64,000 nt of DNA. Source: Macrostomum lignano (lineage: Eukaryota). The stretch spans positions 53,109 through 117,108 of the forward strand of contig NIVC01000193.1 in assembly GCA_002269645.1 (NCBI GenBank), read 5' to 3'. Below, piece by piece: positions 3,892 to 46,200 of this stretch (position 1 is its first letter; each line of letters opens with the position of its first letter). The position numbers were made by a program, and so were the translations under genes. The notes under the pieces are model-generated. The model was not told the origin of the DNA. It did no database searches and was given only the letters and a program-made list of their open reading frames with translations.

Positions 3892-5078
<1,187 letters not shown>

Positions 5079-7316: not shown

Positions 7317-7745
7317 AGATCTCGCAGGTCCCAGATCCCCAACTCCCAGATCCCCAACTCCCAGATCCCCAACTCCCAGATCCCCAACTCCCAGATCCCC
7401 AACTCCCAGATCCCCACCTCCCAGATCCCCAAGTCCCAAATCCTCAACTCCCAGATCCCCAACTCCCAGATCCCCAACTCCCAGATCCCCAACTCCCACG
7501 ATCCCCAACTCCCAGATCCCCAACTCCCAGATCCCAACTCCCAGATCCCCAACTCTCAGATCCCCAACTCCCAGATCCTCAACTTCCATGATCCCCAATT
7601 CCCAGATCCCCAATTCCCAGATCCCCACCTCTCAGATTCCCAACTCCCAGATCCCCAAGTCCCATATCCCTAACTCCCAGATCCCACCTCTCAGATTCCC
7701 AGCTCCCACATCCCCAATTCCCAGATCCCAAATTCCCAGATCTCC
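7317..7745. repeat. 15-bp minisatellite (CCCAGATCCCCAACT) in the intron before the NeuroD coding exon
   Basis: Tandem copies ending ~40 bp before the acceptor TCCCGCAG at 7788. Confidence 0.95.
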
Positions 7746-7797
7746 AACATCCCAAATTGCATTTCTTCATCACCCCCTGATCCCGCAGGCAAGCCGC

Positions 7798-8473
7798 ATG
7801 ACAACAGCCACCGCCAGCTCGATGAAGTGTGAGCAGTCCGCAGAAGCTGGAAGCTCCGGCACAGCAGCCGACCCGTCAGCGGCCCAGACCGCCTCTGGCA
7901 AGGTGCCAAAGAAGCGCGGCCCCAAGAAGAAGCAGATGACGCCAGAGCGAGTGGCCAAGCTGAAGCTCCGGCGGGTTCGAGCGAACGCACGCGAACGCAG
8001 TCGAATGCACGGCCTAAACGAGGCGCTCGACAACCTGCGCCAGTACATCCCCTGCTTCTCGCAGTCTCAAAAGCTGAGCAAGATCGAGACTCTGAGACTG
8101 TCCAGGAACTACATCGCGGCACTCAGCGACATTCTGAGGCGGGGCGAGCAGCCGGACCCGCTGGCCTTTGCCAGAGCTCTGACGGACGGCTTGTCGCAGG
8201 GAACCGCCAATCTGGTTGCGGGTCGCTGCAGGTCAACCCGCGGCTGCTGCTGGCCGCGCAGGATCGGGAGGGATCGGCGGAACCGCCACACCCGCCGTCA
8301 CTGCCGCTGCCGACGCCCCCGCCGCCGCCTCCGCCACCTCAGCAGCAGCAGCGCCAGGCCAGTCACGTGACTTCTGCAGCATTCGGACATTCATCTGCAG
8401 TGTTCGGACATCAGCATGAGGGGCGGAACATTGGTTATGACTTCTACAGTGATGGATTTGCCGGCGGTTACTT

Positions 8474-9377: not shown

Positions 9378-11404
<2,027 letters not shown>

Positions 11405-11488
11405 GATTCTAAAACATTCTTATCAGAGTCGCCAGGAATGCAATCGGTATCCAGGCCACTTTGTCGCCAAGTCCGCTTGCAGCTCCCA

Positions 11489-17663
<6,175 letters not shown>

Positions 17664-20948: not shown

Positions 20949-23395
20949 TCACTCCATCTCAAAGTCAGTTTGAAATTCCATTCCAATTCCCGCTTGAAAT
21001 TCCTCGCCAAAATCGTCAACTGGGATGTCCTCGACGGCGTTAGCAGCGGAGGAGGGAGATGCGGCAGTCACGGCAGCATCGGCGGAGCTCCATTTCAGAC
21101 AGCGTCTAACACTCTTGCTGCACTTCAGACCGGTGACCAAGCGAATCTCGTTGGCGCTTAAGCCGCTCTGGCTGAGGTCGCGAATTCGAGTCAGTCTGTC
21201 AAATTGAGTTCGCAGTTAAGGAGGATTTTTGTTGTTTGCCACCATTTTTCTATGAAAAGTATTTCATTTTCCAATAATAGCAAATCAAAGGTACCATTTG
21301 AATCGAATGAGCTGTCGGATGAAAAGTGACATACTGGGACTAACCCCTGGGATCCCGGGAATTTGTGAGCCCTAGTGACACGTGTGTAACATTCGGATCT
21401 GGTGGATAGTCTTGTCATTAATGTTACAGCGGATGGGTCTAACTACCATAGTTGACAGGATAGTATAGGATTTGCTACAACTGAAACAGGCAATATTTTG
21501 GCGTGCAGGGAAACTGGTACTCAACGTCTCTCAGGGCGCGTACGTTTATCTATCTCATCTGCCTTTATATTATGACTTGACTTGGTTAAATGTGGTTGGC
21601 GACACCCACCCCCACTCCGTAACTAATCAGACAGCCCTAATCATGTGTGCACTGGCCCACAATAACGGTGCGTACGCACGCACACTACAAGATCAATTAT
21701 TTATTTTATAGAACTTAGGTTACACCGATCCTCTACAGTGGCGTACGCAGGGGGGCAGGGGGCCGCGCGGCCCCCTCCCAATGGAAAGTCCTGCGTACGC
21801 CACTGATCCCTGTGTAAAAATTAGTAATAATAAATAATAATAAAATGTCTATGGCCTTAAATTAGTTAAATTATCACTTGTGGAGCCAGGACTGGTTAAA
21901 TGCTTTGGTTTAGTATACTTTAAGTGTCTTAGTCTGATTAAAAATAACAGTAAAATAAAACCCTCTCTCTAGCCGCCTTTATTATCGATTTTATTGCCTC
22001 GCCATCCGACCCCTAGCTATAACCCCTTCTAGGGACAGGATAATGTACATTGCAGACCCTATCGCAGTTTAAGGGTTGGTTGGGCCTGTCCTCTCTTCAA
22101 TTTTAGTATCACACCCTGCCAAGGCGCCAACCTCCTCCGGAGATAAGCTAGCCTGTACATCGATAACCCCTCCTCCCTCTTTTACAACCTCCCAAAGGCT
22201 CTCTTAAGTCCTGTTGGAACGAAATTAATCCCAAAGATTTTTTATAACTTGTCGCGATTTTATGAAATGAAGCCCAGTACCACCATGCTTGAGCAGAAGA
22301 TGTTTTTCGAACAAGCACTACTTGTATGTACCTATCTGTCATCTATATAATTCTTAAAGTAAACAGACGTATCTTACTTCTAAAAGTAATAAAGTACATG
22401 TAAGATTTTACGATGCGATTTTCTGTGTGTAATGTGAAATGACAAAGCCAGGGGATATAGTCTCACCGAATGCAGTGGTTCGAGTACAGCTTGCTAAGCC
22501 GTGCTTTCTTGCTGACGTATCGCATAAAATTCTGCATATAATTAATACCCCGATTAATACTGGTAGAATAGCCTCTACCGTTGCGCGCCGGTTTAGGGAA
22601 TAGCGAGTTGTCATTAGTAAATTCCGGCAATAGGTTGATGTATGACTTCAGCTGCTCTAAGCCCGTGTACATTCGCACCGACCCACAGGCATTCCTGCTG
22701 GTTCCGCCAGGTGTTAAATCTGTGTAGAAGCCTTCATCCTGCTCCAGAGTTGCGAATTCACGACCCTCTTCGTCGATAGAGAACACTAGGTGGTCGCGTC
22801 TTATTAGCTTTTGCTGGGCCTGTTGGTTATGCCTCTGCTGGTGCTGCGATGGGGTGCAGCCAAAATGGTAGAACAACGCGAATAGCGCTCCATCTTGTAG
22901 ACGCTCCTCCATCGAGTAACCTCCGGCACTGCTGCCATTGAAATAGTCTTCAAGCAGTTGACGGTCAGCGTGCAGCATTGGCGCATAGTGTCGCACGGAG
23001 CTGCCACTGGAGCTAGCATATTCCCGAGCTCGCTGGCCCAACATCCGGTTGGAGGTCATGAACACCGGATTTCCGGGCAGGATTAGCGGTCGACCCAGCA
23101 CCACATCGAAATAGCGCTGAATCCCAGCCCGGATGCAGATTAGCGACGACGGGGAATACAATTTATCTTGCTTCGTTCGCAACGTGAAATAGAAGAAGCG
23201 CAGGTACTCGTTGACGGCTCTCTCGTCGATTGTACGCAGATCAACTTTGGTATTTTTACTGTGAACAAACTGCACAAATCGGGTGCCGTGTTCTATCATC
23301 TGCTCTCGACTGGAGGGTGCAACGGTGCTTAGCATTTCAGCGCTAACTCTAACGAGGTTCTCCGTTGCTCCTGTCTGCTGTTTTACAGAGGACAT
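20949..23395 (-). CDS. Crypton-derived tyrosine-recombinase-like (DUF3504/KCTD1-ZMYM type) protein, ~391 aa, 2 coding exons, probably catalytically inactive
   Basis: Exon 1 23395-22467 ends NHCI-CG|GTGAGA; exon 2 21195-20949 starts after TTTGACAG. The join reads LSKLYSNHCIR-LTRIRDLSQSGLSANEIRLVTGLKCSKSVRRC, matching the Crypton YTNHSLRAT..TGHxS..SLxxY box. Upstream FYFTLRTKQDKLYSPSSLICIRAGIQRY matches the family N-terminal motif. Confidence 0.8.
21736..21805. mobile_element. 70-bp MITE-like palindrome in the Crypton-like gene intron
   Basis: 16-bp perfect inverted ends CAGTGGCGTACGCAGG / CCTGCGTACGCCACTG; no clear TSD. Confidence 0.55.
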
Positions 23396-24091
23396 TTTCT
23401 AAAGTGAAGAATCGCTGTGTAATGTAAAACAAAACCTCTTGTTGACGGCAGCTTAACTAAGTGAAGATTTCGATAGCTTTGCTTGCTTGATATTGTGCGC
23501 AGGGCAGGGGGTGATATTGGGGGAGGGTCGGAGGGAGGATAGTCTATGGCCATGCCTGGTTTTTTGACACAAAATTTAACTATCGGGTGGTGGTTAGACC
23601 ATAGATCTATGGGGCGTTTCTTAGCTTTCTGATCTTTTTTATCTCGCTTCTATTACTTCCGCGACTGCTGAGGCGGTGGCGATCTCTCTCGGGCGCTTTG
23701 TCTGCGGAACGTTGACCAAACATCTCGGTATAATGGGTAAATAATCAGCGGTCCCAGTGCGTGATAACGATTGTCTGGCGAGCGCCGGTAGGCGCGAGCC
23801 ATAGACAAATCGTTGTCACGTGCTGCGACCGCTGATTCTTTGCATTGTTTTTCTGTTTGACGATCCTACAGACAATGCATTGTTTGTAGTAGTGGATTGT
23901 TCTGCAGTAAAAATGTGAATAATGATCGTCAAATTGCTAAACAATGGGAAAGTATACACATTTACCAGCTACGTTGATAGACGTTTAAAACGGCGGCGGA
24001 CGTCTCACCGACGTCGGATTCCTGTAAGGGTGGCAGGCAAGATTTTGGCAGCATTTTGCCGCCAATATAAAGCGCTTATAGTTGCTAGCAG

Positions 24092-27500: not shown

Positions 27501-28469
27501 AAGAATCTTAAAGTGAATAAATATTAATTGTTGTATAGTGTATCCTGTTTTCTATTTATTTTTTTTTCCAAAAAAACTTTAAAAAGTTTTTTTAGTATTG
27601 CCATTATGGCTATGCCATATATTGGCACAGTGGCATGCAAATTTACCATAGTATAGCTATTATGCTATACTAGATAATAGATAAATATGCCAAGCATATT
27701 TTCAGGTCCACTATATCTTAAAAATTTTGTAGCATACATGTAAGATTTGCAAAACAGGGACTTATCTATGATTAATTTCAGAAAAAATAGCTTAATCAAT
27801 TTCCATAAACTGTATACTATTGTCAATTCAATTAGAAATTTTACTACTATTGTGCATGTATCACATGGCTAAAAAATGCTACACATAAAAAGATATTTTA
27901 TTTGAAAAAATGTTTCTTTTGCAAAGGTCAAATTAACTTTTCCACTTAAAATGTATTTTTATAAGAATTTTGAAGAAAAAACTAAGTGACTAAATTCTGA
28001 TTGTAATAATACATTATTATTGTATCACAATAGACCTAAGCTTATCATTTATTGTTGATGAGTTTATTGGTTTATAGGCTATTTTATAGGTTGAAACAAA
28101 TATGTGCAACCCCCGTGCAACTGGCCGTGCAACTTAATTTTTGACCAAAATTGATTTACCTATGAAAGAAACAATCAAATATGAAATCTTACCAATCATT
28201 TGTAAGTATTTGTTAAGTATATAACCAAGGCTAATAATATAATTTGTTATGTAATATTTTTTAGCCATTCAAAAGTGTTATGCTAAAAGTCAATCAGCTA
28301 TACCAAATTTATAGTCAAGTTGCTTTTTCAATTCAATTCTTGAAAATGTTATAAAATTCTAATTTGCCATTTCTTTCAATTTTCTATTCCATTAAGTGAT
28401 GCTGCTAATCAGCATTGCAATAGAAGTCTCCAACTCCTATCAAGTTGTTGTCAATGCCAGACAATCAGC

Positions 28470-30037
28470 TTGAGGCAATTCAGTCAGCAGCTTCTATACT
28501 ACTCATCTGCTAGTAGGATCAGTAGTATAAACGAATGGCGCATTGCATTTGTATTAGGCAAGCCAGGCAGTGGAAAGGGCACTCAAGGTCAGCTCTTGGC
28601 CAGTCGTCTGGGCCTTCACCATCTGTCAGCTGGAGAGCTGCTGAGAAGTGAACTAAAGCGCCTGTCTGACACACCAACTGGTCAGGACATTGCAAACCGA
28701 ATGCTCACTGGCAAGATTGTACCGTCCGAGATCACTTGTCGGTTATTGTTGGATAACATGGCTGCCAGTGCTGTCAGTAGCGGTGCTTGTAAAACAGTAA
28801 GTAAGTCTATTTGCATTATTTTTGTATTAGAGTTTTGGTAAGTATAATTGAATCTTAGTTGAGGCAAACCTTCCGGTTTTGCGCCCTAGATCTAGAATCA
28901 GATCTCAGAATCTCACCCTAGATCTAGAATCAGGTCTCTAAATCTCACCCTAGATCTCGAATCAGCTCTCATAATCTCACCCTAGATCTAGAATCAGCTC
29001 TCTGAATCTCACCCTAGATCTAGAATCAGCTCTCATAATCTCACCCTAGATCTAGAATCAGATCTCTGAATCTCGCCCTAAATCTAGAATCATCTCTCAG
29101 AATCCCACCCTAGATCTAGAATAAGGTCTCAGAATCTCAGCCTCTAATTTGAATCAGATCTCAAAATCTCACTCTAGATCTAGAATCAGATCTTAGAATC
29201 TCACCCTAGATCTAGAATCAGATCTCTGAATCTCACCCTAGATCTAGAATCAAATCTCTGAATCTCACCCTAGATCTAGAATCAGATCTCAGAACCTCAC
29301 CCTAGATCTATAATCAGGTCTCAAAATCTCACCCTAGATCTCGAATCAGCTCTCATAATCTCACCCTAGATCTCGAATCAGCTCTCATAATCTCACCCTA
29401 GATCTAGAATCAGGTCTCAAAATCTCACCCTAGATCTCGAATCAGCTCTCATAATCTCACCCTAGATCTAGAATCAGCTCTCTGAATCTCACCCTAGATC
29501 TAGAATCAGCTCTCATAATCTCACCCTAGATCTAGAATTAGATCTCAGAATCTCACCCTAGATCTAGAATCAGCTCTCAGAATCTCACCTTAGATCTAGT
29601 AACAGATCTCTGAATCTCACTCTACAAAACCTTTCCATTGACTGTAATGCCAGCAGGCAGCCAGCTTCATAATTGATGGATTTCCGCGCAATCTGGACAA
29701 TTGGCTTGGCTGGCAAGGGTGCTGCCCACCTGACAGCGTCAGTAATGCAGCAGATTTGCCAGCGAACCTGTCAGTAGCCGGCGTGCTACTGTTTGATGTG
29801 TCAGACGAAACCTGTTTGAGTCGATGCCTTGAGCGCTCCGGCAGCGTCGGTGTCGGATGTCGAGCCGACGACAATGCGACAACTTTAGCCAAGAGATTGC
29901 AGTCGTACTCGGCCGATACGGAGCCTGTAGTTGGAGAGTTTCAGCGGCTGGGTCTGCTTCATCGGATTGATGCCAGCGGAGGTGTGGAAACGGTCTATCA
30001 ACTGGCCAAGTTGGCTTGCGAGAAAATGCGGTTGTGA
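28470..30037 (+). CDS. cmpk1: UMP-CMP kinase / adenylate-kinase family protein, 2 visible exons, start codon unresolved
   Basis: Exon ~28470/28535-28796 carries FVLGKPGSGKGTQ (P-loop), HLSAGELLR and GKIVP, then donor ACA|GTAAGT. Exon 29654/29657-30037 carries IDGFPRN, RCLER..RADDN and IDA. Confidence 0.8.
28878..29615. repeat. 32-bp minisatellite filling the kinase intron
   Basis: Unit CCTAGATCTAGAATCAGCTCTCTGAATCTCAC. Confidence 0.95.
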
Positions 30038-30139
30038 ATTTATTTGTAGAATTTGACATTTTAGGAGAAGCTGAATTGCTTGGAGTGGGTTTTTAGCTTA
30101 GCTATAAGATTGAAGTCTTGTTTTTTAACTGAGAGAATA

Positions 30140-31390
30140 TCATAGATTATCAGTGAGAATGGCTCTAATCTCATGGATTATCAGTGAGAATGGCTCTAAT
30201 CTCATAGATTATCAGTGAGAGAGAGAGAGAATGGCTCTAATCTCATAGATTATCAGTGAGAATGGCTCTAATCTCATAGATTATCAGTGAGAATGGCTCT
30301 AATCTCATGGATTATCAGTGAGAATGGCTCTAATCTTATAGATTATCAGTGAGAATGGCTCTAATCTCTTGGATTATCAGTGAGAATGGCTCTAATCTTA
30401 TAGATTATCAGTGAGAATGGCTCTAATCTCATAGATTATCAGTGAGAATGGCTCTAATCTCATAGATTATCAGTGAGAATGGCTCTAATCTCATGGATTA
30501 TCAGTGAGAATGGCTCTAATCTCATAGATTATCAGTGAGAATGGCTCTAATCTCATAGATTATCAGTGAGAATGGCTCTAATCTCATAGATTATCAGTGA
30601 GAATGGCTCTAATCTTATAGATTATCAGTGAGAATGGCTCTAATCTCATGGATTATCAGTGAGAATGGCTCTAATCTCATAGATTATCAGTGAGAATGGC
30701 TCTAATCTCATGGATTATCAGTGAGAATGGCTCTAATCTCATGGATTATCAGTGAGAATGGCTCTAATCTCATGGATTATCAGTGAGAATGGCTCTAATC
30801 TCATAGATTATCAGTGAGAATGGCTCTAATCTCATGGATTATCAGTGAGAGTGGCTCTAATCTCATAGATTATCAGTGAGAATGGCTCTAATCTTATAGA
30901 TTATCAGTGAGAATGGCTCTAATCTTATAGATTATCAGTGAGAATGGCTCTAATCTCATAGATTATCAGTGAGAATGGCTCTAATCTTATAGATTATCAG
31001 TGAGAATGGCTCTAATCTTATAGATTATCAGTGAGAATGGCTCTAATCTTATAGATTATCAACGGGAGTGGCTCTAATCTCATGGATTATCAGTGAGAAT
31101 GGCTCTAATCTCATGGATTATCAGTGAGAATGGCTCGCTCTAATCTCATGGATTATCAGTGAGAATGGCTCTAATCTTATAGATTATCAGTGAGAATGGC
31201 GCTAATCTCATGGATTATCAGTGAGAATGGCTCTAATCTCATGGATTATCAGTGAGAATGGCTCTAATCTCATAGATTATCAGTGAGAATGGCTCTAATC
31301 TCATTGATTATCAACGGGAATGGCTCTAATCTCACAGATTATCAGTGAGAAGGGCTCTAATCTCACAGATTATCAACGAGAATGGCTCTA
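30140..31390. repeat. 31-bp minisatellite between the kinase and CHORDC1 genes
   Basis: Unit ATAGATTATCAGTGAGAATGGCTCTAATCTC, about 40 copies. Confidence 0.97.
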
Positions 31391-31738
31391 AAATCAGAGA
31401 CTACCAATGGGATATCAGAGATTATCAATATAAATAACTCTTTAAAATACAGTAAAAATTGCTTACACTTACCATGAAGCCGCTGTTATAAGTCACAAAA
31501 TTCAGCAATCTTTTTAAAAAAAATTATTACTGCTTTGCGTAAATATTTTCATTTACGAAATTCTATTTAAAAAATAAATACATGATTTAAAACTGTTTGC
31601 GTTTGACTAGAAATTGTGTTTATTTTTTATTCTTTTACCAAAAAATTCCGTCTATACTACTAGTTGAGTTTACGGAAAGTAAGTAGCTACATCGAATTGT
31701 ATTGAATTTCATGCTTAATCAATCTACAATTAATTGCA

Positions 31739-34440
31739 ATGCAATACTGCTACAACAAAGGCTGCGATCAGAAGTTCGACCCAACTAAAAACTCGGACAA
31801 CGCTTGCGTATTTCATCCCGGCGCGCCAGTGTTTCACGATGGTGGCAAGAAATGGTCCTGCTGCAACAAGAGCTCGGTAGACTTCACCACCTTCCTGCAG
31901 ATCAAAGGCTGCTCTAAGGGGCCGCATAATCCCGTCAAGCCGCCGCCTCCACCGAAGCCGGAGAGAAGTGCTGAAATCTACAATGAGCCTGTGCTGGTGC
32001 GGAGACCCGCGGAGGCTGCCAGCAATGGAGAGGCTGCCAGTCGGCCGCCAGTTGATGAAGAAAAATTGCCGCTTAATAAACAGGTGAGGATTCTTAGAAT
32101 TAAGTGAGGTTTGGGCTCGGGGAATTTGCTATGAAATCGGCCTCCAAATATTCTTAGAATCATATTTAAATCATTTGTAGAATCGCTCTTAATACATTTT
32201 TAGAATTGCTCGTAAATGTTTCTTAGAAGCATGTTTCACTTATTCTTAGAATCGCTTTTTAAATGATTCTTAGAATCGCCATTAACTTATTCATAGAACC
32301 CATAAATCATCTTTAGAGTCATACTTAAATCATTCTTAGAGTCATACTTAAATCATTCTTAGAATCATACTTAAATCATTCTTAGAATCGCCCTCAACTC
32401 ATTCTTAGAATCGCCCTCAACTCATTCTTAGAATCGCCCTCAACTCATTCTTAGAATCGCCCTCAACTCATTCTTAGAATCGCCCTCAACTCATTCTTAG
32501 AATCGCCCTCAACTCATTCTTAGAATCGCCCTCAACTCATTCTTAGAATCGCCCTCAACTCATTCTTAGAATCGCCCTCAACTCATTCTTAGAATCGCCC
32601 TCAACTCATTCTTAGAATCGCCCTCAACTCATTCTTAGAATCGCCCTCAACTCATTCTTAGAATCGCCCTCAACTCATTCTTAGAATCTCCCTCAACTCA
32701 TTCTTAGAATCTCCCTCAACTCATTCTTAGAATCTCCCTCAACTCATTCTTAGAATCTCCCTCAACTCATTCTTAGAATCGCCCTCAACTCATTGTTAGA
32801 ATCGCCCTCAACTCATTCTTAGAATCGCCCTCAACTCATTCTTAGAATCGCCCTCAACTCATTCTTAGAATCGCCCTCAACTCATTCTTAGAATCGCCCT
32901 CAACTCATTCTTAGAATCGCCCTCAACTCATTCTTAGAATCTCCCTTAACTCATTCTTAGAATCTCCCTCAACTCATTCTTAGAATCGCCCTCAACTCAT
33001 TCTTAGAATCGCCCTCAACTCATTCTTAGAATCGCCCTCAACTCATTCTTAGAATCGCCCTCAACTCATTGTTAGAATCGCCCTCAACTCATTCTTAGAA
33101 TCGCCCTCAACCCATTCTTAGAATCGCCCTCAACTCATTCTTAGAATCGCCCTCAACTCGCTCCTTCTGAAATCCAGGTGGACTCCCGGTTGCTAGCCGA
33201 GCTGGACAAAACAGCCGAGCGTCGCAGGGCCGAAGCCGAGAAGGCCGCCGCCAGCGGTTCCGCCCAGCAACCAGACTCCGCTGCCTCGGCCTCATCCGAC
33301 AACGGCAGCGTTGCCATGGGAACCGGTTGCAAAAACTCGGGCTGCCGGGCCACCTACTCCGGGCCACAGTCGGACAGGCAGGTCTGCTACTACCACCCAG
33401 GCGGCCCCGTGTTCCACGAGGGCATGAAGTACTGGAGCTGCTGCCAGAGGAAGACCACAGAGTTCGATAATTTCATGTCTCAGGAGGGCTGCGAGCAGGG
33501 CAAGCACTGCTGGACTAAACCGAACTCTAAAGGTGACGATAGCAAGGATGGTCCTGCCAGCGTCCATTGCCGCTGCGACCATCATCAGGGCAAGGCCGGT
33601 TACATCACGCTTGATGTGTTTGCAAAGCTGTGTGTCCCAGAGGAATGCGTCATCGAAGCTAATCGGGTCTGCTGCTCTGTCAAGCTGCTGTTTGCAGCTG
33701 GGCAGAGCCGGTTTCAGCGCGACTTTGTGCTCTACGATGTGAGCACTTACTCATTTCATTGTTGTCTAATCTTATATGAGATTCCAGTGTCTAATCTTAT
33801 ACGAGAGTCCAGTGTCTAATCTTATATGAGATTCCAGTGTCTAATCTTATATGAGATTACAGTGTCTAATCCTATATGAGATTCCAGTGTCTAATCTTAT
33901 ATGAGATTCCAGTGTCTAATCTTATATGAGAGTCCAGTGTCTAATCTTATATGAGAGTCCAGTGTCTAATCTTATATGAGATTCCAGTGTCTAATCTTAT
34001 ATGAGAGTCCAGTGTCTAATCTTATATGAGAGTCCAGTGTCTAATCTTATATGAGATTCCAGTGTCTAATCTTATATGAGATTCCAGTGTCTAATCTTAT
34101 ATGAGATTCCAGTGTCTAATCTTATATGAGATTCCAGTGTCTAATCTTATATGAGATTCCAGTGTCTAATCCTATGTGAGATTCCAGTGTCTAATCCTAT
34201 GTGAGATTCCAGGGTCTAATCTTATATAAGATTTCAAGTCATTCACACTTTTCTTATTTGCACGTACATTTTTATGACCTTAACTGACCTTGATTTATTG
34301 TCTTAATAGCCATTCAACCCCCCCCCCTCTCGCAGGTGATTGACCCGTCGCAATCCTGCGTGAATATCCGACCGACCAAGGTGGAAATTCTGCTCAAAAA
34401 AGTCAACGCGGCCAATTGGCCCTCGCTCGAGCTGGTCTGA
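31739..34440 (+). CDS. chordc1: CHORD-CHORD-CS protein (CHORDC1/Morgana/CHP-1), 336 aa, 3 exons
   Basis: Exons 31739-32083, 33178-33738, 34336-34440, all phase 0 GT-AG. Two CHORD domains ([22 protein letters not shown] and [24 protein letters not shown]) plus a CS domain ending [19 protein letters not shown] at ~34512. Confidence 0.93.
32325..33156. repeat. 23-bp minisatellite, CHORDC1 intron 1
   Basis: Unit CTTAGAATCGCCCTCAACTCATT. Confidence 0.97.
33768..34228. repeat. 25-bp minisatellite, CHORDC1 intron 2
   Basis: Unit GATTCCAGTGTCTAATCTTATATGA. Confidence 0.95.
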
Positions 34441-36608: not shown

Positions 36609-39600
36609 ATGGTTCGCGACCGCAGCTGGATCGAACTCCTGGGCGCCAAGGCCATCAGACGGAAGAGTCTGACAGAGGCGCAGTCTCTGGACACTCCGCT
36701 CAACCGGTGCCTGTCTGTGTGGCATCTGACCTTCTTCGGGGTGGCGCACATGGCTGGTGCCGGGATTTATGTTTTGTCCGGGACAGTCATCAAGGAGTAC
36801 GCTGGTGAGTGGCGCGCCTGAACGTGCGCATGTTGTGTACTTTTAAGCGCCGTTTCATCATCACCGGTATTTTGGCGCCATTTTTATCATCACCGGTATT
36901 TTTAACGCCATTTTTTATTATCACCGATATTATGGCGCCGTTTTTATCGTCACCGGTATTTGGCTCCGTTTTTATCATCACCGGTATTTTGGCGCCGTTT
37001 TTATCACCACCGGTAATTTGGCGTCATTTTTAATTATCACCGGTATTGGCGCCGTTTTTATTATCACCTGTATTTTAGCGCCGTTTTTTATCATTACCTG
37101 TATTTTGGCGCCGTTTTTTATCGTCACCTGTATTTTGGCGCCGTTTCTATCATCACCGGTATTTTGGCGCCGTTTTTATCAAACCGGTATTTTGGCGCCG
37201 TTTTTATCACCACCGGTAATTTGGCGCCATTTTTTATTATCACCAGTATTGGCACCGTTTTTTATCATCACCGGTATTTTGGCGCCGTTTTTTATCATCA
37301 CCGGTATTTTGGCGCCGTTTCTATCATCACCGGTATTTTGGCGCCGTTTTTATCACCACCGGTATTTTGGGGCCATTTTATCATCACCGGTATTTCGCGC
37401 CAGATGATGCCCGATTTCACACTCCAATATGCTATTATTCAGGCCCAGCCGCCAGCCTCAGCTTCACTCTGTGCGCCATCGCCTCGCTCTTCACCGGCAT
37501 GTGCTACGTTGAGTTCGCCAGTCTGGTGCCCAAAGCGGGCAGCTCCTACACCTACACCTACTGTGTTCTGGGAGAGCTGCCCGCCTTTATTGTTGGCTGG
37601 ACTATGCTGCTGGACTATATTCTCAGCATGGCAACTGTTGCTAAGGTACCATTAGTGCTTGCATAGTTGCATGAAATGAAAAAATTGCTGTATAATCCTG
37701 ACAATTACCCAAACCTGACCCGAACCTAGCTAAAACCTAATAGCATAATATTGATTACACCTGCCTCAATTGGGAAGATGGGCAACCGACAGCTCAGCCG
37801 CAGCTATTGCGCGGCGCATCTGAAGGCTGCGTACGGCTGTTCAGTCCAAAGATTGGGGGGGGGGGGTCGCCCCACACTCTCAATTGCCCCAAGCACCCAT
37901 TTTACAGCTGGGTGAACTGAAGCAATGCAGAGTTAAACGTCTAGCTCAAGGACACAAATTGTTCCGAGTGGGATCGGGAATCGAACACCTGACCTTTCAG
38001 TTTTACCACTATCGAGGAGAAAATCGCAATATTCGCTCCGCCTGGGTGACGGCCAGTGACCAACGAAGTCAGAGCTGATGCAGACACATATGGTCGATGT
38101 GCTGATGAAATTTGGAGGCTTGGCAAGGCCGCACTGAGGCGCAGTGCTGATTGCCGCACAGGAGTTTACATGGTAAAAGGCCGACCCTCTGGCAGAATTT
38201 CTGAATATCTCGACTGTCTGTCCCTCGGCTGTCTACTTGATTCTTGTTTGCGTAGGTGCCCAACAAAAAGTTCTTGTATTTGGTTCCGGCGCAGCAATAA
38301 AATGTCAAGGGGATTCTTCCTTGGTCTTATAGGGGCTTGTAGCCTAGTGGGTTAGAGCGTCAGACTCAACTTAAAGGTCGGGGGTTCGATTCCCGATCCC
38401 ACTGGAACAATTTGTGTCCTTGAGCAAGACGCTTAACTCTGCATTGCTTCAGTTCACCCAGCTGTAAAATGGGTGCCAGCATTAGCTGGGGTAATTGAGG
38501 CTGTGTGTAGCGACCCCCAGAGACGTCCTTGGACTGAACAGCCGTACGCAGCCTTCAGATGCGCCGCGCAATAGCTGCGGCTGAGCTGTCGGTTGCACAT
38601 CTGGCCGAAAAATTTAACGCACAGTTTCACAAGCCATCCGACAGGCATTCAGCGGCACAGTGGACTCTCTGAGCAAGCAGAAGATCAGCAACTTCGTGTC
38701 TGCAAATCTTGGCACTCTGCCAAAAGCTTGGTCAATCTTTGACGAGACCTGGGACCTGCTGGCTGTGGGCTTGATCCTAGTCTTGGCCCTGCTGCTCATC
38801 GGCGGAGCAAAGTTCTCAATGTCGGTTAACGCTGGACTGAGCACTGCTCAGCTGCTGTGCCTGCTCACCGCCACAGTTGCCTGCTTCGTCTACGGCTCCC
38901 TTGACAACTGGACTGCCGGCAGCGGCTTCTTCCCCTTCGGCGGCGTCGGCGTGGTGGAAGGCGCCAGCATCGCCATGTTCGCTTTCTCGGGCTTCGAGAG
39001 CGTCGGCTCGGCAGCGGAGGAGTGTAGCAACCCGAAGCGGGACCTGCCCAGGGCTCTGCTAGCGAGCCTGTCGGCTGTCAGTGTGGTGTACGTCGTGGCC
39101 TGCCTGGGCCTGTCATTCCTTCAGCCCTACTGGAAGCTCAACGTTGCTGCACCATTTGTGGTGGCTTTCTCCGGACATCCGGGAGCCAAATGGGCGGAGG
39201 TCACCGCCGCGGTTGGCACTCTGTTGGCCACGGGCGCGACCAAAGTTACCGGGCTGTTCGTGGTGCCGCGGCTCATGTACGCCCTGGCATCTGACGGGGT
39301 CATCTTTGGTGCCTTTGCCAACGTTAATGAGAGAGTGCAGGTGCGCGAGATGGAAAGGCTGGAGTGACGGGCAGATAGTGGTTGAAGTCTGAAGCTATAA
39401 GATAGAGATTCGGTGGATAAACAGACTGATAAGGTAGAGATTCGGTGGACAAACAGCCTGACAAGGTAGAGATTTGGTGGACAAACAGCCTAATAAGGTA
39501 GAGATTCGGTGGACAAACAGCCTGACAAGGTAGAGATTTGGTGGACAAACAGACTGATAAGGTAGAGATTCGGTGGACAAACGGCTTGATAAGGTAGAGA

Positions 39601-42319
39601 TTCGGTGGACAAACAGCCTGATAAGGTAGAGATTCGGTGGACAAACAGCCTGATAAGGTAGAGATTCGGTGGACAAACGGCCTGATAAGGTAGAGATTCG
39701 GTGGACAAACAGACTGATAAGGTAGAGATTCGGTGGACAAACGGCCTGATAAGGTAGAGATTCGGTGGACAAACAGCCTGATAAGGTAGAGATTCGGTGG
39801 ACAAACAGCCTGATAAGGTAGAGATTCGGTGGACAAACAGCCTGATAAGGTAGAGATTCGGTGGACAAACAGCCTGATAAGGTAGAGATTCGGTGGACAA
39901 ACAGCCTGATAAGGTAGAGATTCGGTGGACAAACGGCCTGATAAGGTAGAGATTCGGTGGACAAACGGCCTGATAAGGTAGAGATTCGGTGGACAAACAG
40001 CCTGATAAGGTAGAGATTCGGTGGACAAACAGCCTGATAAGGTAGAGATTCGGTGGACAAACAGCCTGATAAGGTAGAGATTCGGTGGACAAACAGGCTG
40101 ATAAGGTAGAGATTCGGTGGACAAACAGCCTGATAAGGTAGAGATTCGGTGGACAAACAGCCTGATAAGGTAGAGATTCGGTGGACAAACAGCCTGATAA
40201 GGTAGAGATTCGGTGGACAAACAGGCTGATAAGGTAGAGATTCGGTGGACAAACAGACTGATAAGGTAGAGATTCGGTGGACAAACAGGCTGATAAGGTA
40301 GAGATTCGGTGGACAAACAGACTGATAAGGTAGAGATTCGGTGGACAAACAGACTGCCAGGCAGAGGTCAGTGGAATGACTCAAAAAAGCCAGCAGTGCA
40401 GTGAATTGCCAACTCTCCCTCACGCAGGTGCCTCTGCTCGGCTTAGCCTTTGGCGCAGTCGTATCGAGTGTACTGGCCCTGCTGTTCAGACTCAACTTCC
40501 TAGCCGAGATGGTCAGCATGGGCACCCTGGTGTCGTACTGCTTCATCGGGGTCGACCTGTTCGTGCTGCGCTACTTGCACTTTGCAGAGCTGCCTGGCGA
40601 CTCGCCGGTTCAACTGAGAGCCTGGGCTGCCAACGGAATTCTGGCTCGATGCGTTCCAGGACTCGCCAGGGTTCGGTGGCTTCGCAGACTGTTTTTAGCG
40701 TTCCTGCTGGGTTGCGTCTGGCTGGCCACCACCCTGTCAGTCATTATCAAAGGCACTCAGCTCTGGCGCTGGGCCTTTCTTGCACCGCCAGGACTCGCCC
40801 TGATCTTCTCTGGAGCCCTGCTGACTGCCTTCAAGCCGTACGACGTGCCTGGAATGTACATGTCGCCTGGCCTGCCGCTGGCGCCTCTGTTGGCAGTTCT
40901 GATCAATGTCCTGCTGCTGTCCAGGCTGTCAATCAGATCCTGGATTCGGTTCTTCTGCTGGCTTTTCCTTGGTTTGCGACTGGTTTTGCTTCTAGGGGCA
41001 TTTGAAATTTTGCTCTACTGAGTCTGGTTCCATCCTTACTGTGTCTGGTCTCGTCCTTACTGTGTCTGGTCTCATACTTACTGTGTCTGGTCTCATCCTT
41101 ACTGTGTCTGGTCTCGTCCTTACTGTGTCTGGTCTCATCCTTACTGTGTCTGGTCTCGTCCTTACTGTGTCTGGTCTCATCCTTACTGTGTCTGGTCTCG
41201 TCCTTACTGTGTCTGGTCTCATCCTTACTGTGTCTGGTCTCGTCCTTACTGTGTCTGGTCTCATCCTTACTGTGTCTGGTCTCGTCCTTACTGTGTCTGG
41301 TCTCATCCTTACTGTGTCTGGTCTCGTCCTTACTGTGTCTGGTCTCGTCCTTACTGTGTCTGGTTCCATCCTTACTGTGTCTGGTTCCATCCTTACTGTG
41401 TCTGGTATCGTCCTTACTGTGTCTGGTCTCGTCCTTACTGTGTCTGGTCTCATACTTACTGTGTCTGGTCTCATCCTTACTGTGTCTGGTCTCATCCCAC
41501 TGCCCCACTTGTCACTCCCACTGCCCCAATTGTCACTCCCACTGCCCCAATTGTCACTCCCTCAGCCCCAATTGTCACTCCCACTGCCCCGATTGTCACT
41601 CCCACTGCCCCAATTGTCACTCCCTCAGCCCCAATTGTCACTCTCACTGCCCCACTTTTCACTCCCACTGCCCTAATTGTCACTCCCACTGCCCCAATTG
41701 TCACTCCCTCAGCCCCAATTGTCACTCTCACTGCCCCACTTTTCACTCCCACTGCCCTAATTGTCACTCCCACTGCCCCAATTGTCACTCCCACTGCCCC
41801 ACTTGTCACTCCCACTGCCCCAATTGTCACTCCCTCAGCCCCAATTGTCACTCCCTTAACCCCAATTGTCACTCCCACTGCCCCACTTGTCACTCCCACT
41901 ACCCCAATTGTCACTCCCACTGCCCCAATTATCACTCCCACTGCCCAAATTGTCACTCCCACTGCCCCAATTGTCACTCCCACTGCCCCAATTATCACTC
42001 CCACTGCCCCAATTGTCACTCCCTCAACCCCAATTGTCACTCCCACTGCCCCAATTGTCACTCCCACTGCAGTCCAAAGTCACTCTTGTGCAATTCGCTC
42101 CTCACCATCGCCGCAGGCCTGCTGATGTACATTCTCTACGGCGTGAAGCACAGCAAGGCCAAGTCCGTGGACGACTATCCGGACAGCAACCAGGATAAAG
42201 CAGTCAAAGACTCAAGGCCTGACGTCACTGGTGACCAACTGGCAGACACACCAGCCGCTGACAAGGACAAAACTACTTCTGAACCAGAGAATGAAGAGAA
42301 AAAGGAATCTGAAACTTGA
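36609..42319 (+). CDS. Cationic amino acid transporter (SLC7A1-4/CAT family), ~613 aa, 5 exons
   Basis: Exons 36609-36804, 37443-37645, 38645-39340, 40428-40971, 42117-42319; phases consistent, 1842 nt. Motifs LNRCL..GAGIYVL..YAGPA, CYVEFASLVPKAGSSYTY, FAFSGFE..AEEC.NPKR, PRLMYALASDG, MVSMGTLVSY, YILYGVKHS. Confidence 0.92.
36855..37395. repeat. ~29-30-bp minisatellite, CAT intron 1
   Basis: Unit approximately ATCATCACCGGTATTTTGGCGCCGTTTTT. Confidence 0.9.
37776..38002 (-). mobile_element. 5'-truncated copy of the tRNA-derived CORE-like SINE
   Basis: Reverse complement of 38367-38602 with scattered substitutions; retains the B box. Confidence 0.75.
38332..38602 (+). mobile_element. tRNA-derived SINE with a CORE(MIR)-like central domain
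   Basis: A box TAGCCTAGTGG at 38340-38350 and B box GTTCGATTCC at 38384-38393, followed by TGTGTCCTTGAGCAAGACGCTTAACTCT..CAGTTCACCCAGCTGTAAAATGGG, which resembles the CORE-SINE domain. Confidence 0.75.
39400..40355. repeat. 32-bp minisatellite, CAT intron 3
   Basis: Unit GATAAGGTAGAGATTCGGTGGACAAACAGCCT. Confidence 0.97.
41030..41493. repeat. 21-bp minisatellite A, CAT intron 4
   Basis: Unit CTTACTGTGTCTGGTCTCATC. Confidence 0.95.
41495..42070. repeat. 21-bp minisatellite B, CAT intron 4
   Basis: Unit CCCAATTGTCACTCCCACTGC. Confidence 0.95.
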
Positions 42320-43188: not shown

Positions 43189-43290
43189 CACGCTTCCACT
43201 GCGAGTACTTCGATGTACTAGATCATTCTGGTAATCTGGTTCTTCGTGCCATTTGGAAACTTGATCGCTCGGTCGATCAGTTACGTTGCT

Positions 43291-46200
43291 ATGGCTGCAA
43301 GCGAAGAAAAATGGCACATAGAGAAGCTCACGAAGGACAATTGGATGACGTGGAAAATCCAAATGAAACATTGCTTAGTCGCAAGAAGACTCTGGGGCAT
43401 AGCTACCGGAGAAGATGTTCTTCAGCAAGACGCAAATGAAGCACGACGCAATGAATTCAAGGAACAGCAACAGCGAGCAGCAGCAATGATAGTTCTGTCT
43501 CTCAGCAGTGAGTACATCTACCTTGTGACTACATGCGATGATGATCCGAGGCAGATGTGGCAAATTTTATGTGGTCATTTCGAACGTGACTCGACTGCCA
43601 ACAAGTTGTTTTTGAAGAAAAAACTATTTAGACTGCAGATGACTGATGGGACTCCAGTTCAGGAGCACATTCGCTGTCTGAAGGAGTTAACTGACAAGCT
43701 GGCGTCCATTAATGCTGCTGTGTCTGACGAAGACCAGGTTGTGATTCTTCTTAGCAGTCTACCTGACAGCTACAGTCATCTGGTTACGGCTCTGGAGACC
43801 CGAAAGGAAGAGGAGCTGACTTTGCTGACGGTTCAACAAGCACTGCTTAATGAAGAAATGAAACGAAGTGAAACTATGAAATACGAATCCCGTGACTCGT
43901 AATCTGCTCTTCGTGTTGACAAATTTAAGGGACGCAGACCAATTAAGTGCTACACATGTGGCAAGGAAGGACACTTCAGTAGAGAGTGCAGGTTCAACGT
44001 GAGCAACAGGCAGCAAAACTCAAAATCGACTCTGCATAAAGCAAAAACTGCAGAAAGTACGAGTCATTCGAATCCGAACCTGGACAATGAGATAGCCGAT
44101 AGTGCCGCTACATTTCTTACCTCTGAAGAAACTGGTCCTCAGGACACAACCGCACGGTGGATAATTGACTCTGGTGCGACAAGACATATGACCTGTCAAA
44201 GGAATGCTCTAAAAGACTACACTGAATTCGATGAACCGGAAAATGTAGGGCTCGGAGACGGGCGAACAGTTCAAGCTTACGGAACTGGACGAGTGGACAT
44301 CGTCACGAGACTCCCTGGTGGTGAGCGTTCTAACGCAGTACTTGGATCTGTACTTTTCGTACCTAGACTAGCCTGCAATCTGTTCAGTGTACGTGCGGCT
44401 ACACTTAAGAACAATGCCATTCAGTTTGGTCACACTAGGTGCTGGATTCGAAACCAAACAAGGAAGCTAGTAGGCTTTGGAACACTAGTTGATCGATTGT
44501 ACCAACTTGAGTGTGATGTAGATTGCAACTTAGCTACAGCTGCAGTAACGACTACAAAGTCAGAGCTCGAAACTGCCAATTTGTGGCATCAACGTCTAGG
44601 ACATCTCCACAGAAATCAACTCGAACAACTATTCAAGAAAAGGTACGTCGAGGGTACTGACACTTCCATTGTGAGTGATACGAATTTTTGTGAAGCGTGC
44701 GTTGAAGGAAAGGCACATCGAAAGAATCACAAATCAGTGGGAGAAATTCGCTCATCAGAAGTACTGCAACTTGTGCACAGTGACATTTGTGGACCAATGC
44801 AGACGCAGTCGTTTGGCGGGAATCGATTTTTTGCGACTTTCATCGATGACTTCTCTCGCATTGTGAAGGTCTATTTTCTGAAGACTAAGTCTGAAGTCTT
44901 CCAGAAGTTTAAGGAATTCGAAGCGCAGGTGACTAATGAGACTGAAAAAAACAATAAAAGTTCTCCGAACTGATGGTGGAGGAGATTACATGTCCAAGGA
45001 ATTTTCTGCGTTTTTACTTGCAAAAGGAATTCGACACGAAATTTCGGTTGCCCACACACCAGAACAGAACGGTGTTGCTGAAAGAATGAACCGTACTCTC
45101 ATCGAATCTGCTAGAACAATGATAACTCATGCTGGTCTTAGCAATGCTTATTGGGCAGAAGCCATCAACACAGCCGCGTATATCCGCAACAGTGTCCCGA
45201 CGAACTCGGTAGCGCCAATGATGACACCCTACGAAAGATGGTGTGGACGAAAGCCAAACATCTCACACCTTCGAACGTTTGGCTGTGTAGCTTATGCTCA
45301 CATTCCTACAGTAGAGAAACAAAAACTTGATAAGAAGACTACCAAGCTTAGGTTCGTTGGCTACAGTGACAATCAAAAGGGCTACAGATTGTTTGACGAA
45401 AGAACTAGGAAAACAGTTGTTCGTTACGATGTCATCTTCAATGAGGGAGACTTCGGAAAGTTGAATGATTTCCAGCAGAACAATGAAAAGATAAATTCAC
45501 ATATGGAAGTGAACCTCGACGAGCACAACAGCCGAACAACTCCGAATGAAGAAATTGAAACTGAAATCCAAAAAATTCTGCCAACGACCACGCGACAAAG
45601 AAAAACCCCAGAGCGTTTTCAATACAATGAGAACTTCGAAGTAGCTAGCCTAAGTACAACAGAGCCACAACATCGTGCTTTTCGAGCCATGGAGATTTTG
45701 GAACCCAGATCGATTGACGAGGCTTGGAGTTGTGACAATGCGAAGGAATGGAAAGAAGCAACAGACTCGGAATACAACTCTCTGATAGAAAATGATACGT
45801 GGGAATTAGTTTCTCTTCCAGAAGGACGAAAGACTGTTGGCTGCAAGTGGGTATTCAAAGTGAAGCATGACAGCTGCGGAAACATTGAACGATTCAAAGG
45901 ACGCCTGGTTGCCAAAGGGTATTCTCAACAACCTGGAGTGGATTATGACGAGACGTTTTCTCCTGTGGTAAGATTATCATCAATCCGTACTATACTGGCA
46001 TTCGCAACTCAACGAGAAATGCACATTCATCAAATGGATGTGGTCACTGCATTTCTAAACGGACATTTAACAGAAGAAATCTTCATGGATCAACCACCCG
46101 GATACGTTAAATGCGACGAAGAGAATTTAGTCTGCAAGCTGAAAAGATCGCTATATGGTCTAAAGCAATCACCCCGGTGTTGGAACAAGGCCCTCTGTGA

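What the first reader, a model, noticed from the sequence alone, without database searches (positions are those of the whole stretch)
20949..23395. Domesticated Crypton tyrosine-recombinase gene with a dismantled active site
Seen: a clean 391-aa two-exon ORF with a phase-2 intron inside the HxxR Arg codon and no TE termini. Compared with Crypton/DUF3504 consensus motifs, the first catalytic Arg box (FGxRG) reads FGCTP, the TKN Lys is absent, HxxR is kept (NHCIR), TGH becomes TGL and the nucleophilic Tyr becomes Cys (SVRRC). A Gln-rich insert and an acidic C-tail were added. Established: Cryptons gave rise to host genes such as KCTD1/15, ZMYM and QRICH1. Inference: this stand-alone, non-catalytic form could be an independent domestication acting as a DNA-binding or chromatin factor, or as a repressor of active Cryptons.
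Basis: partly seen in the sequence, partly recalled or inferred. Interest (0 to 1): 0.75.

Follow-up and report, generated by a model that had tools for sequence, protein, structure and literature searches.

The report
Catalytically dead Crypton recombinase gene, flatworm
A flatworm (Macrostomum lignano) gene descended from a Crypton "jumping-gene" enzyme keeps the enzyme's fold but has lost the residues needed to cut DNA. It still looks preserved by selection, so it is probably one more case of a transposon protein reused by its host.

Summary
Window 23395..20949 (minus strand) encodes a 391-aa, two-exon protein identical to GenBank "hypothetical protein BOX15_Mlig029737g1" of Macrostomum lignano.

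- **Family and fold.** Its relatives are CryptonA-type tyrosine recombinases, and its predicted fold matches Cre.
- **Active site.** All 47 aligned relatives keep the first Arg, the Lys and HxxR; all 44 that cover it keep the Tyr. The candidate alone has R181T, K to R234 (or absent), H333L and Y342C. It keeps only H307/R310.
- **Not a dispersed TE.** The three copies seen (window, g1, g3) share flanks and neighbouring genes.
- **Selection.** Exons carry about 10 times fewer substitutions than flanks and intron (P about 1e-5). Neutral decay explains four lost catalytic residues plus an open frame with P of at most 2e-4.
The intron in the HxxR Arg codon is shared with catalytically intact relatives, and animal Cryptons have no terminal repeats anyway. 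Neither feature argues for domestication.
- **Caveats.** No orthologue was found outside M. lignano, copy g3 has a 1-nt frameshift, and expression is inferred only from an RNA-seq-based annotation.

Most likely this is a lineage-restricted, non-catalytic DNA- or protein-binding derivative: a new member of a known kind.

The parts
22467..23395 (-). Exon 1 of the CDS (aa 1-309 plus the first two bases of the Arg310 codon). It encodes the N-terminal core-binding (QRICH1-type) domain and most of the recombinase catalytic-domain scaffold.
   Evidence: identical to BOX15_Mlig029737g1; weak PF25561 hit at aa 43-96; pLDDT 83-94 over aa 31-120
21196..22466 (-). Intron, 1271 nt, GT..AG, phase 2, inside the Arg codon of HxxR. 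It varies in length between copies: in the GenBank g1 locus about 13.8 kb of minisatellite arrays replace window 21341..21821.
   Evidence: the same junction CG|GTGAG occurs in relative P0002
20949..21195 (-). Exon 2 (last base of the Arg310 codon, aa 311-391, stop at 20951..20949). It holds TGL, the Cys that replaces the nucleophilic Tyr, and the acidic tail.
22844..22864 (-). Degenerate box I: FGCTPSQ where all relatives have FG-x-RGRE (R181T, G182P, E184Q).
22808..22843 (-). Gln-rich segment HQQRHNQQAQQK, containing a 9-aa insertion relative to all relatives. Disordered in the model.
22691..22699 (-). S233-R234-N235, the likely counterpart of the xKN motif that carries the catalytic Lys (K to R). 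The alignment is ambiguous here.
   Evidence: low pLDDT at aa 220-238
22467..22480 (-). NHCI plus CG of Arg310: the retained HxxR motif (H307, R310), split by the intron.
21126..21134 (-). TGL: the second catalytic His is replaced by Leu (H333L). Relatives have TGH; the candidate's own subclade has TGQ.
21099..21101 (-). Codon TGT, Cys342, in the position of the nucleophilic Tyr.
20952..21080 (-). C-terminal tail aa 349-391: 11 acidic and 0 basic residues, predicted disordered. It replaces the FxNCxF-type C-terminal motif of the intact relatives.
23399..23410 (-). Pyrimidine-rich tract plus AG (tcttcactttag) ending 3 nt before the ATG. Possibly a spliced-leader trans-splice acceptor (inference only); an in-frame TAG lies two codons upstream of the ATG.
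   Evidence: what the sequence shows; 38.8% of M. lignano genes are trans-spliced (PMC5730564)

Best explanation
This is a host-retained, catalytically inactive derivative of a CryptonA-type tyrosine recombinase. It belongs to a subfamily that has at least two intact lineages in M. lignano.

Shown:
- The protein keeps the two-domain recombinase architecture: an N-terminal core-binding (QRICH1-type) domain plus a Cre-like catalytic-domain scaffold.
- Four of the six catalytic residues are replaced (R181T, K to R234 or absent, H333L, Y342C), as is the box I Glu (E184Q). Only H307 and R310 remain.
- It has lost the N-terminal NIPG-type and C-terminal FxNCxF-type motifs of the intact elements. It has gained a Gln-rich loop and an acidic disordered tail.
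- It sits at one locus, seen here in three copies that share flanks and neighbouring genes. Its exons evolve about 10 times more slowly than the surrounding DNA.

Follows from established knowledge of tyrosine recombinases: without the Tyr nucleophile and the first Arg it cannot form the 3'-phosphotyrosyl intermediate, so it cannot cut or rejoin DNA.

Inferred mechanism: it uses the preserved recombinase clamp surfaces to bind DNA and/or partner proteins without catalysis, as a transcription or chromatin co-factor. This is how the Crypton-derived domains of QRICH1, ZMYM/WOC and KCTD1b are thought to act. The acidic and Gln-rich additions would serve as interaction or activation-type modules.
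For: - Gene model and identity to a GenBank protein. That annotation derives from RNA-seq transcripts and excludes transcripts overlapping annotated repeats (PMC5730564).
- Family: 768 homologues at E<1e-3. Of 48 aligned members, 42 hit PF00589, 37 DUF3504 and 34 the QRICH1 domain.
- Fold: the AF2 model (mean pLDDT 70) matches Cre/Tre at E about 1e-6, TM 0.53. XerA and IntI follow, and QRICH1 in the Zincore-DNA complex 9hjt_H at E 2.8e-4.
- Catalytic residues are kept by every relative that covers them (TGH/TGQ aside) and lost only here.
- Scaffold: divergence is spread evenly over the N and C domains (C/N identity ratio 1.04, against a median of 1.02 in relatives). The invariant non-catalytic residues R89, R94, D144 and G283 are kept.
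- Synteny of window, g1 and g3 over more than 8-20 kb, including the CHORD and adenylate kinase neighbours.
- Substitutions, window versus g1: 1 synonymous in 1176 exon nt against 35 in 3355 non-coding nt (Fisher P=4e-4).
- Substitutions, three-way over exon 1: 2 against 16.5 expected (P=1e-5).
- Neutral decay gives at least 4 of 6 catalytic changes with no stop codon at P of at most 1.9e-4 for any divergence, indels ignored.
Against: - No orthologue with the same degenerate site was found among 1.84 billion representative proteins. The closest non-self hit is 42% identical. Long-term conservation and cross-species dN/dS are therefore unproven.
- Copy g3 (PAA50910.1) has a 1-nt deletion in a GGG run that truncates it to 196 aa. 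This could be an assembly error or real loss of a redundant copy.
- Expression is inferred from how the annotation was made, not seen directly. The gene id was not found in the supplementary expression tables I could search.
- The candidate matches no Pfam model below E=0.01.
- DNA or protein binding is inferred by analogy only.
- The exon versus flank contrast rests on few substitutions between very similar copies.
Confidence: 0.6

Rival explanations
1. It is an expressed but decaying relic: a single old Crypton insertion, duplicated with the genome, that is slowly degenerating and has no host function. The open frame survives by luck or because inactivation was recent.
For: - No orthologue outside M. 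lignano.
- Longest terminal branch in its subclade, and no Pfam match.
- Copy g3 is frameshifted.
- Incipient domestication and degenerating remnants are hard to tell apart in CryptonA elements generally (PMC13465315).
Against: - Neutral decay long enough to change 4 of 6 catalytic residues leaves an open 391-codon frame with joint P of at most 1.9e-4, before counting indels.
- Exons carry about 10 times fewer substitutions than adjacent intron and flanks, with no indel in two of the three copies.
- Non-catalytic invariant residues and both domains are as conserved as in the intact relatives.
- The GenBank annotation excluded repeat-overlapping transcripts.
Confidence: 0.2
2. It is a trans-dominant regulator of the intact Crypton-like recombinases in the same genome. 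A dead protomer would occupy their recombination sites or join their tetramers and block transposition, by analogy with truncated transposase repressors.
For: - Intact relatives co-reside in M. lignano. The P0013 and P0161 clusters hold 8 near-identical predicted proteins, and BOX15_Mlig009749g2 is intronless with R, K, HxxR and Y intact.
- The candidate falls in the same subclade.
- Tyrosine recombinases work as multimers (PMC3212892).
Against: - It is only 34-40% identical to those relatives, which is distant for sharing DNA sites or forming heteromers.
- It lacks their conserved N-terminal and C-terminal motifs.
- Crypton target sites are unknown, so there is nothing to test against.
Confidence: 0.12
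3. It is still an active recombinase or nuclease that uses an unconventional active site, for example Cys342 as the nucleophile.
For: HxxR is retained, and a Cys sits exactly where the Tyr should be.
Against: - The first Arg, the Lys, the second His and the box I Glu are all replaced as well.
- To my knowledge no tyrosine-recombinase-fold enzyme is known to use Cys (own knowledge, not tested here).
- The locus shows no sign of mobility.
Confidence: 0.03

Closest known systems
QRICH1 (Crypton-derived; part of the Zincore co-regulator, PDB 9hjt)
   Same: It derives from a Crypton tyrosine recombinase and has lost catalytic residues. It carries Gln-rich sequence. The candidate's N-terminal domain weakly matches Pfam 'QRICH1 domain', and 34 of 48 relatives match it strongly. 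The model matches chain 9hjt_H, which is bound on DNA.
   Different: There is no detectable direct sequence relationship: no DUF3504 hit, and PDB sequence search is empty. [quoted passage not shown] According to PMC3212892 it lost the second Arg and the His as well as the Tyr. The candidate keeps HxxR, is a 391-aa stand-alone protein and is known only from M. lignano.
WOC/ZMYM2-4, KCTD1b and KIAA1958 (DUF3504 genes; Kojima and Jurka 2011)
   Same: These are animal host genes made from CryptonA recombinases whose catalytic site was lost. They are thought to act through DNA or protein binding in transcription regulation (PMC3212892).
   Different: Those genes are ancient and widely conserved. 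ZMYM/WOC and KCTD1 carry extra domains (MYM zinc fingers, BTB). The candidate has none, matches no DUF3504 model, shows a different pattern of residue loss, and groups with intact flatworm-type Cryptons rather than with these genes.
Intact Crypton-like genes of M. lignano (BOX15_Mlig009749g2; UniRef A0A1I8HWE8 family)
   Same: They are the closest relatives (34-40% identity) and share the domain order. The CG|GTGAG intron junction is shared with P0002 at DNA level, and P0014 and P0163 end at the same point. They come from the same genome.
   Different: They keep R, K, HxxR and Y (with Gln in place of the second His) and the N- and C-terminal motifs. The A0A1I8HWE8 family occurs as 8 near-identical predicted proteins. 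Mlig009749g2 has no intron. The candidate has lost all of these features.
Cre recombinase (phage P1)
   Same: It is the best structural match, covering both domains (E 8.7e-7, TM 0.53).
   Different: Sequence identity is about 12-13%. Cre is catalytically active; the candidate lacks four of the six catalytic residues.

Membership tests
Tyrosine recombinase superfamily | Two-domain fold: a core-binding domain plus a Cre-like catalytic domain | tested here: met
   The AF2 model (mean pLDDT 70) matches Cre/Tre, XerA, IntI and Tn1549 Int. There are 29 PDB hits at E<=1e-3.
Tyrosine recombinase superfamily | Catalytic residues R-K-H-R-H/W-Y, including the nucleophilic Tyr | tested here: not met
   Only H307 and R310 are kept. 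The changes are R181T, K to R234 or absent, H333L and Y342C.
Tyrosine recombinase superfamily | Significant match to Pfam Phage_integrase (PF00589) | tested here: not met
   The candidate has no hit at E<=1, whereas 42 of the 48 aligned sequences do hit. Homology to them is secure (E down to 3.6e-51).
Crypton (CryptonA) DNA transposon | Encodes a recombinase related to animal Crypton / DUF3504-type recombinases | tested here: met
   The relatives match DUF3504 (37 of 48) and the QRICH1 domain (34 of 48). Direct comparison with Repbase Crypton consensus sequences was not possible with these tools.
Crypton (CryptonA) DNA transposon | Multiple dispersed copies whose similarity ends at the element's borders | tested here: not met
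   Three copies were seen (window, g1, g3). All are syntenic over more than 8-20 kb of flank, including neighbouring genes. The GenBank annotation excluded repeat-overlapping transcripts. A whole-genome copy count was not possible.
Crypton (CryptonA) DNA transposon | Intact recombinase able to catalyse transposition | tested here: not met
   The catalytic site is dismantled.
Domesticated Crypton genes (DUF3504: KCTD1b, KIAA1958, ZMYM2-4/WOC, QRICH1) | Match to Pfam DUF3504 (PF12012), or orthology to one of the named genes | tested here: not met
   No PF12012 hit at E<=1. The PDB sequence search is empty. The nearest proteins are intact Crypton-like recombinases, not DUF3504 host genes.
Domesticated Crypton genes (DUF3504: KCTD1b, KIAA1958, ZMYM2-4/WOC, QRICH1) | Loss of the catalytic site while the open reading frame is retained | tested here: met
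   The pattern differs: the known genes lost the Tyr and the second Arg (PMC3212892), whereas this one keeps HxxR.
Domesticated Crypton genes (DUF3504: KCTD1b, KIAA1958, ZMYM2-4/WOC, QRICH1) | Purifying selection and conservation across species | tested here: inconclusive
   Constraint is seen within the genome (exons against flanks P=1e-5; neutral model P<=1.9e-4). No orthologue from another species was found, and one copy is frameshifted.
Domesticated Crypton genes (DUF3504: KCTD1b, KIAA1958, ZMYM2-4/WOC, QRICH1) | Expressed as a host mRNA | not testable with these tools
   This is only inferred. The GenBank model comes from an RNA-seq-guided transcriptome (PMC5730564). The gene id is absent from the searchable supplements.

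The most novel reading that the evidence does not exclude
In a genome that still carries intact Cryptons, a flatworm has kept a dead recombinase as a stand-alone regulator. It would either poison or guide the intact Crypton recombinases, or act as a sequence-specific DNA clamp in stem-cell or germline gene control. That would be a young, experimentally tractable snapshot of how the QRICH1/ZMYM-type co-regulators first arose.
Probability: 0.12. Interest if true: 0.7.

Novelty: new member of a known kind. Interest (0 to 1): 0.42.

Why it matters
Every well-described Crypton domestication is ancient, so the steps from transposase to host factor cannot be seen. This gene has three useful properties:
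- It is apparently young and restricted to one lineage.
- It stands alone, with no added domains.
- Intact relatives sit beside it in the same genome, in a flatworm that has transgenesis and RNAi.

It could therefore show what a recombinase scaffold does once catalysis is removed. If it proved to be only a decaying relic, it would be of little interest.

Tried and rejected
- The prokaryote-type promoter/terminator scan is irrelevant for a eukaryotic gene and was ignored.
- I looked for expression data under the id Mlig029737 in full text and in supplements of three M. lignano papers. Nothing was found; one file was truncated in storage and two papers held no supplements. Absence is not informative.
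- I searched for the source of Logan run SRR28338156, which holds the closest foreign relative. Nothing was found, so the organisms behind P0002, P0012 and P0014 remain unknown.
- A brute-force neutral simulation timed out. An exact per-codon K80 calculation replaced it.
- I checked whether the 13.8-kb extra DNA in the g1 intron is a TE or a Crypton. It has no ORFs of note and consists of 23-nt and 18-nt minisatellite arrays in roughly 4-kb higher-order units.
- I tested whether the catalytic domain is more degenerate than the N-terminal domain. It is not.
- Cross-species dN/dS was rejected: the nearest foreign sequences are 37-42% identical, so synonymous sites are saturated.
- I looked for a second copy inside the window with tblastn. 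There is none.
Full report
**1. What is in the sequence**

On the minus strand an ORF starts at 23395 and runs to a GT at 22466/22465. Splicing 22467 to 21195 (GT..AG, 1271-nt intron, phase 2) continues the frame to a TGA at 20951..20949. This gives 1176 nt and 391 aa.

The spliced product is 100% identical over its full length to GenBank [quoted passage not shown]. The window is therefore flatworm DNA, and an independent annotation arrived at the same two-exon model.

That annotation (Mlig_3_7) was built from genome-guided RNA-seq transcripts. [quoted passage not shown] This is indirect evidence that the gene is transcribed and spliced and was not classed as a repeat. I could not see reads directly, and the gene id did not turn up in the searchable papers or supplements.

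**2. Family and fold**

The word-indexed search found only nine relatives (29-36% identity), most carrying Pfam Phage_integrase. The exhaustive HMMER scan of 1.84 billion representatives found 768 at E<1e-3 and 168 at E<1e-10. Only eight reached E<1e-30.

In an alignment of the candidate with 47 relatives, 42 of the 48 sequences match Phage_integrase, 37 match DUF3504 and 34 match the QRICH1 domain. This is the signature of animal CryptonA-type tyrosine recombinases (PMC3212892; PMC13465315). The candidate itself matches nothing below E=0.01; its best hit is the QRICH1 domain at E=0.013 over aa 43-96.

An AlphaFold2 model (mean pLDDT 70) is confident for aa 31-120 and most of 241-340. It is disordered at aa 1-16, 181-195, 220-238 and 349-391. 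It matches Cre/Tre recombinase over both domains (E 8.7e-7, TM 0.53). XerA, IntI and Tn1549 Int follow. At rank 29 is QRICH1 in the Zincore-ZFP91-DNA complex, 9hjt_H.

**3. The active site**

In the 48-sequence alignment, all 47 relatives have the box I Arg (FG-x-RGRE), the Lys of xKN and H-x-x-R. The Tyr is present in all 44 that cover it. TGH is found in 42 of 45; three have TGQ, and those lie in the candidate's own subclade.

The candidate is the only sequence with:
- FGCTPSQ at box I (R181T, G182P, E184Q);
- S-R-N for the xKN motif (K to R234);
- TGL for TGH (H333L);
- RRC for RY (Y342C).

NHCIR (H307, R310) is kept. The Lys loop aligns differently in the small alignment and in BLASTP, where SKN falls on TDL. 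The model is unreliable there, so "K to R or absent" is the honest statement.

Of the 22 columns that are at least 95% conserved in relatives, the candidate keeps 14. Six of the eight it changes are catalytic-pocket positions (R181, G182, E184, K234, H333, Y342). The other two are a conservative L to V and the start Met. The invariant non-catalytic residues R89, R94, D144 and G283 are kept.

Divergence is spread evenly over the two domains. The C/N identity ratio is 1.04, against a median of 1.02 in relatives. The scaffold is therefore preserved while the chemistry is removed.

The candidate also lacks about 60-80 N-terminal residues, including the NIPG-x-x-ISGL-type motif, and the FxNCxF-type C-terminus of the intact proteins. 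It has gained a 9-aa Gln-rich insertion and a tail with 11 acidic and no basic residues in 43.

**4. One locus, not a dispersed element**

The GenBank g1 locus (NIVC01000169.1, L001) and a second GenBank copy align colinearly with the window. The second copy is BOX15_Mlig029737g3 (PAA50910.1, on NIVC01003538.1, L003). Alignment runs from about 31,300-34,200 down to 21,809. For g1 it continues beyond the gene to about 11,700, including the neighbouring CHORD and adenylate kinase genes.

The copies are alleles or homeologues, which fits the redundancy reported for the DV1 assembly. They are not transposed copies. tblastn finds no other copy in the window, and no terminal repeats flank the gene. 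Animal Cryptons have no terminal repeats in any case (PMC3212892), so that last point is uninformative.

**5. Evidence for selection**

- Window versus g1: 35 substitutions in 3355 aligned non-coding nt (1.04%) plus many indels. The 1176 exon nt hold 1 substitution (C335C, synonymous) and no indel. Fisher P=4e-4.
- Three-way over exon 1 and its surroundings: non-coding tree length is 37 substitutions in 2078 nt. Exon 1 has 2 in 929 nt against 16.5 expected, P=1e-5. The two are M21I and the synonymous I284I, both in g3.
- Neutral model: under a neutral K80 model, at least 4 of 6 catalytic residues changing while no stop codon arises in 391 codons has joint probability of at most 1.9e-4 at any divergence. 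Indels are ignored, so this is conservative.

Against this, g3 has a 1-nt deletion in a GGG run (window 23025) that truncates it to 196 aa. This may be an assembly error or a recent loss of a redundant copy. Also, no orthologue from another species was found; the best foreign hit is 42% identical.

**6. Relatives in the same genome, and the intron**

A neighbour-joining tree places the candidate in a subclade with P0012, P0013, P0002 and P0014, on the longest branch.

P0013 is a M. lignano protein (UniRef A0A1I8HWE8, "Tyr recombinase domain-containing protein"). Its cluster and the neighbouring P0161 cluster together hold 8 near-identical predicted proteins. BOX15_Mlig009749g2 (P0162, 449 aa) is another M. 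lignano relative. All of these retain R, K, HxxR and Y, with Gln in place of the second His.

The candidate's intron junction (CACTGCATTCG|GTGAG) is identical in the contig of the catalytically intact relative P0002. The predicted products P0014 and P0163 also stop exactly at NHC[IV]R. Mlig009749g2 is intronless. The intron therefore predates the loss of catalysis and is not evidence of domestication.

**7. Interpretation**

The best-supported reading is a lineage-restricted, non-catalytic derivative of a flatworm Crypton recombinase, kept by selection at a fixed locus.

- Shown: its ancestry, fold, selective active-site loss, single-locus status and exon constraint.
- Established knowledge: a tyrosine recombinase without the Tyr and the first Arg cannot cleave DNA.
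- Inferred: it acts by binding DNA and/or partner proteins, as proposed for DUF3504 domains (PMC3212892). The DNA-bound QRICH1 complex 9hjt (Bianchi et al. 2025, cited) illustrates this.

Rivals are a slowly decaying expressed relic (0.2), a trans-dominant regulator of the co-resident intact Cryptons (0.12) and an unconventional active enzyme (0.03).

**8. Comparison and novelty**

It works like the known domesticated Crypton genes but is not a member of any of them. It has no DUF3504 match and no orthology to them. Its pattern of residue loss differs: the known genes lost the Tyr and the second Arg, whereas this one keeps HxxR. It has no accessory domains.

No paper in the searchable library links Cryptons to Macrostomum beyond one passing co-occurrence. 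Several independent Crypton domestications are already documented, so this is a new member of a known kind. Interest is moderate. It would rise if orthologues or a phenotype were found, because intact relatives sit in the same tractable organism.

Noticed in passing
window 21341-21821; L001 11577-25383: The gene's intron differs greatly in length between copies. It is 1.27 kb in the window. In the GenBank g1 locus about 13.8 kb of 23-nt and 18-nt minisatellite arrays, in roughly 4-kb higher-order units and without ORFs of note, take the place of this stretch. The g3 locus stops aligning with the window at the same point (window 21809).
   Followed up: partly
window 21736-21805: A perfect 16-nt inverted repeat (CAGTGGCGTACGCAGG / CCTGCGTACGCCACTG) with a GC-rich 38-nt spacer lies in the intron, next to the breakpoint of the length difference. 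Related 15-nt words occur at 24773 and 24996. It may be a small palindromic repeat element.
   Followed up: no
L003 10001-10591 (equivalent to window 23025): The second GenBank copy, BOX15_Mlig029737g3, has a 1-nt deletion in a GGG run that shifts the frame after aa 126 and gives a 196-aa product. It also carries M21I. Whether this is an assembly error or a real pseudogenised duplicate is undecided.
   Followed up: partly
window 43246-47254 (+): A Ty1/copia-type LTR retrotransposon coding region: copia gag, Pol beta-barrel, pre-integrase, integrase remnant, SH3-like and RVT_2 domains. It is split over four consecutive ORFs, so it is probably slightly damaged.
   Followed up: partly
window 7588-8370 (+): An ORF with a bHLH domain and a Neuro_bHLH extension (NeuroD/atonal-like transcription factor), preceded by a 15-nt minisatellite that reads through as a repetitive N-terminus.
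   Followed up: partly
window about 28400-34200, 38660-41021 and 48193-49209: Neighbouring host genes: a CHORD-domain gene (ORF 33178-33819), an adenylate kinase gene between it and the candidate (from the L001 annotation), amino-acid permease exons (38660-39367 and probably 40401-41021), and a PAN/Laminin_G_3-like ORF on the minus strand.
   Followed up: partly
whole window, e.g. 3892-5078, 9378-11407, 11741-12261, 16632-17496, 61189-62511: Tandem repeats are very dense. There are kilobase-long (TATC)n, (ATAG)n, (GACA)n and (TGTC)n microsatellites and about 20 minisatellite arrays with 15-47-nt units. These produce most of the long spurious ORFs.
   Followed up: no
P0003, P0005-P0007, P0009 (C-termini); P0004, P0010, P0012, P0162: Intact Crypton-like relatives share terminal motifs of unknown role that the candidate lacks. 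These are an N-terminal 'N-x-P-G-x-x-ISGL' motif and either a 'KKARLHTSWGLLEIDL' or an 'F-x-N-C-x-F' C-terminus.
   Followed up: no
L004 6001-7350 (NIVC01002014.1): BOX15_Mlig009749g2 is an intronless, full-length, apparently catalytically competent Crypton-like gene (Gln in place of the second His). GenBank annotates it as an ordinary hypothetical protein. Whether it is an active transposon or another co-opted gene is open.
   Followed up: partly
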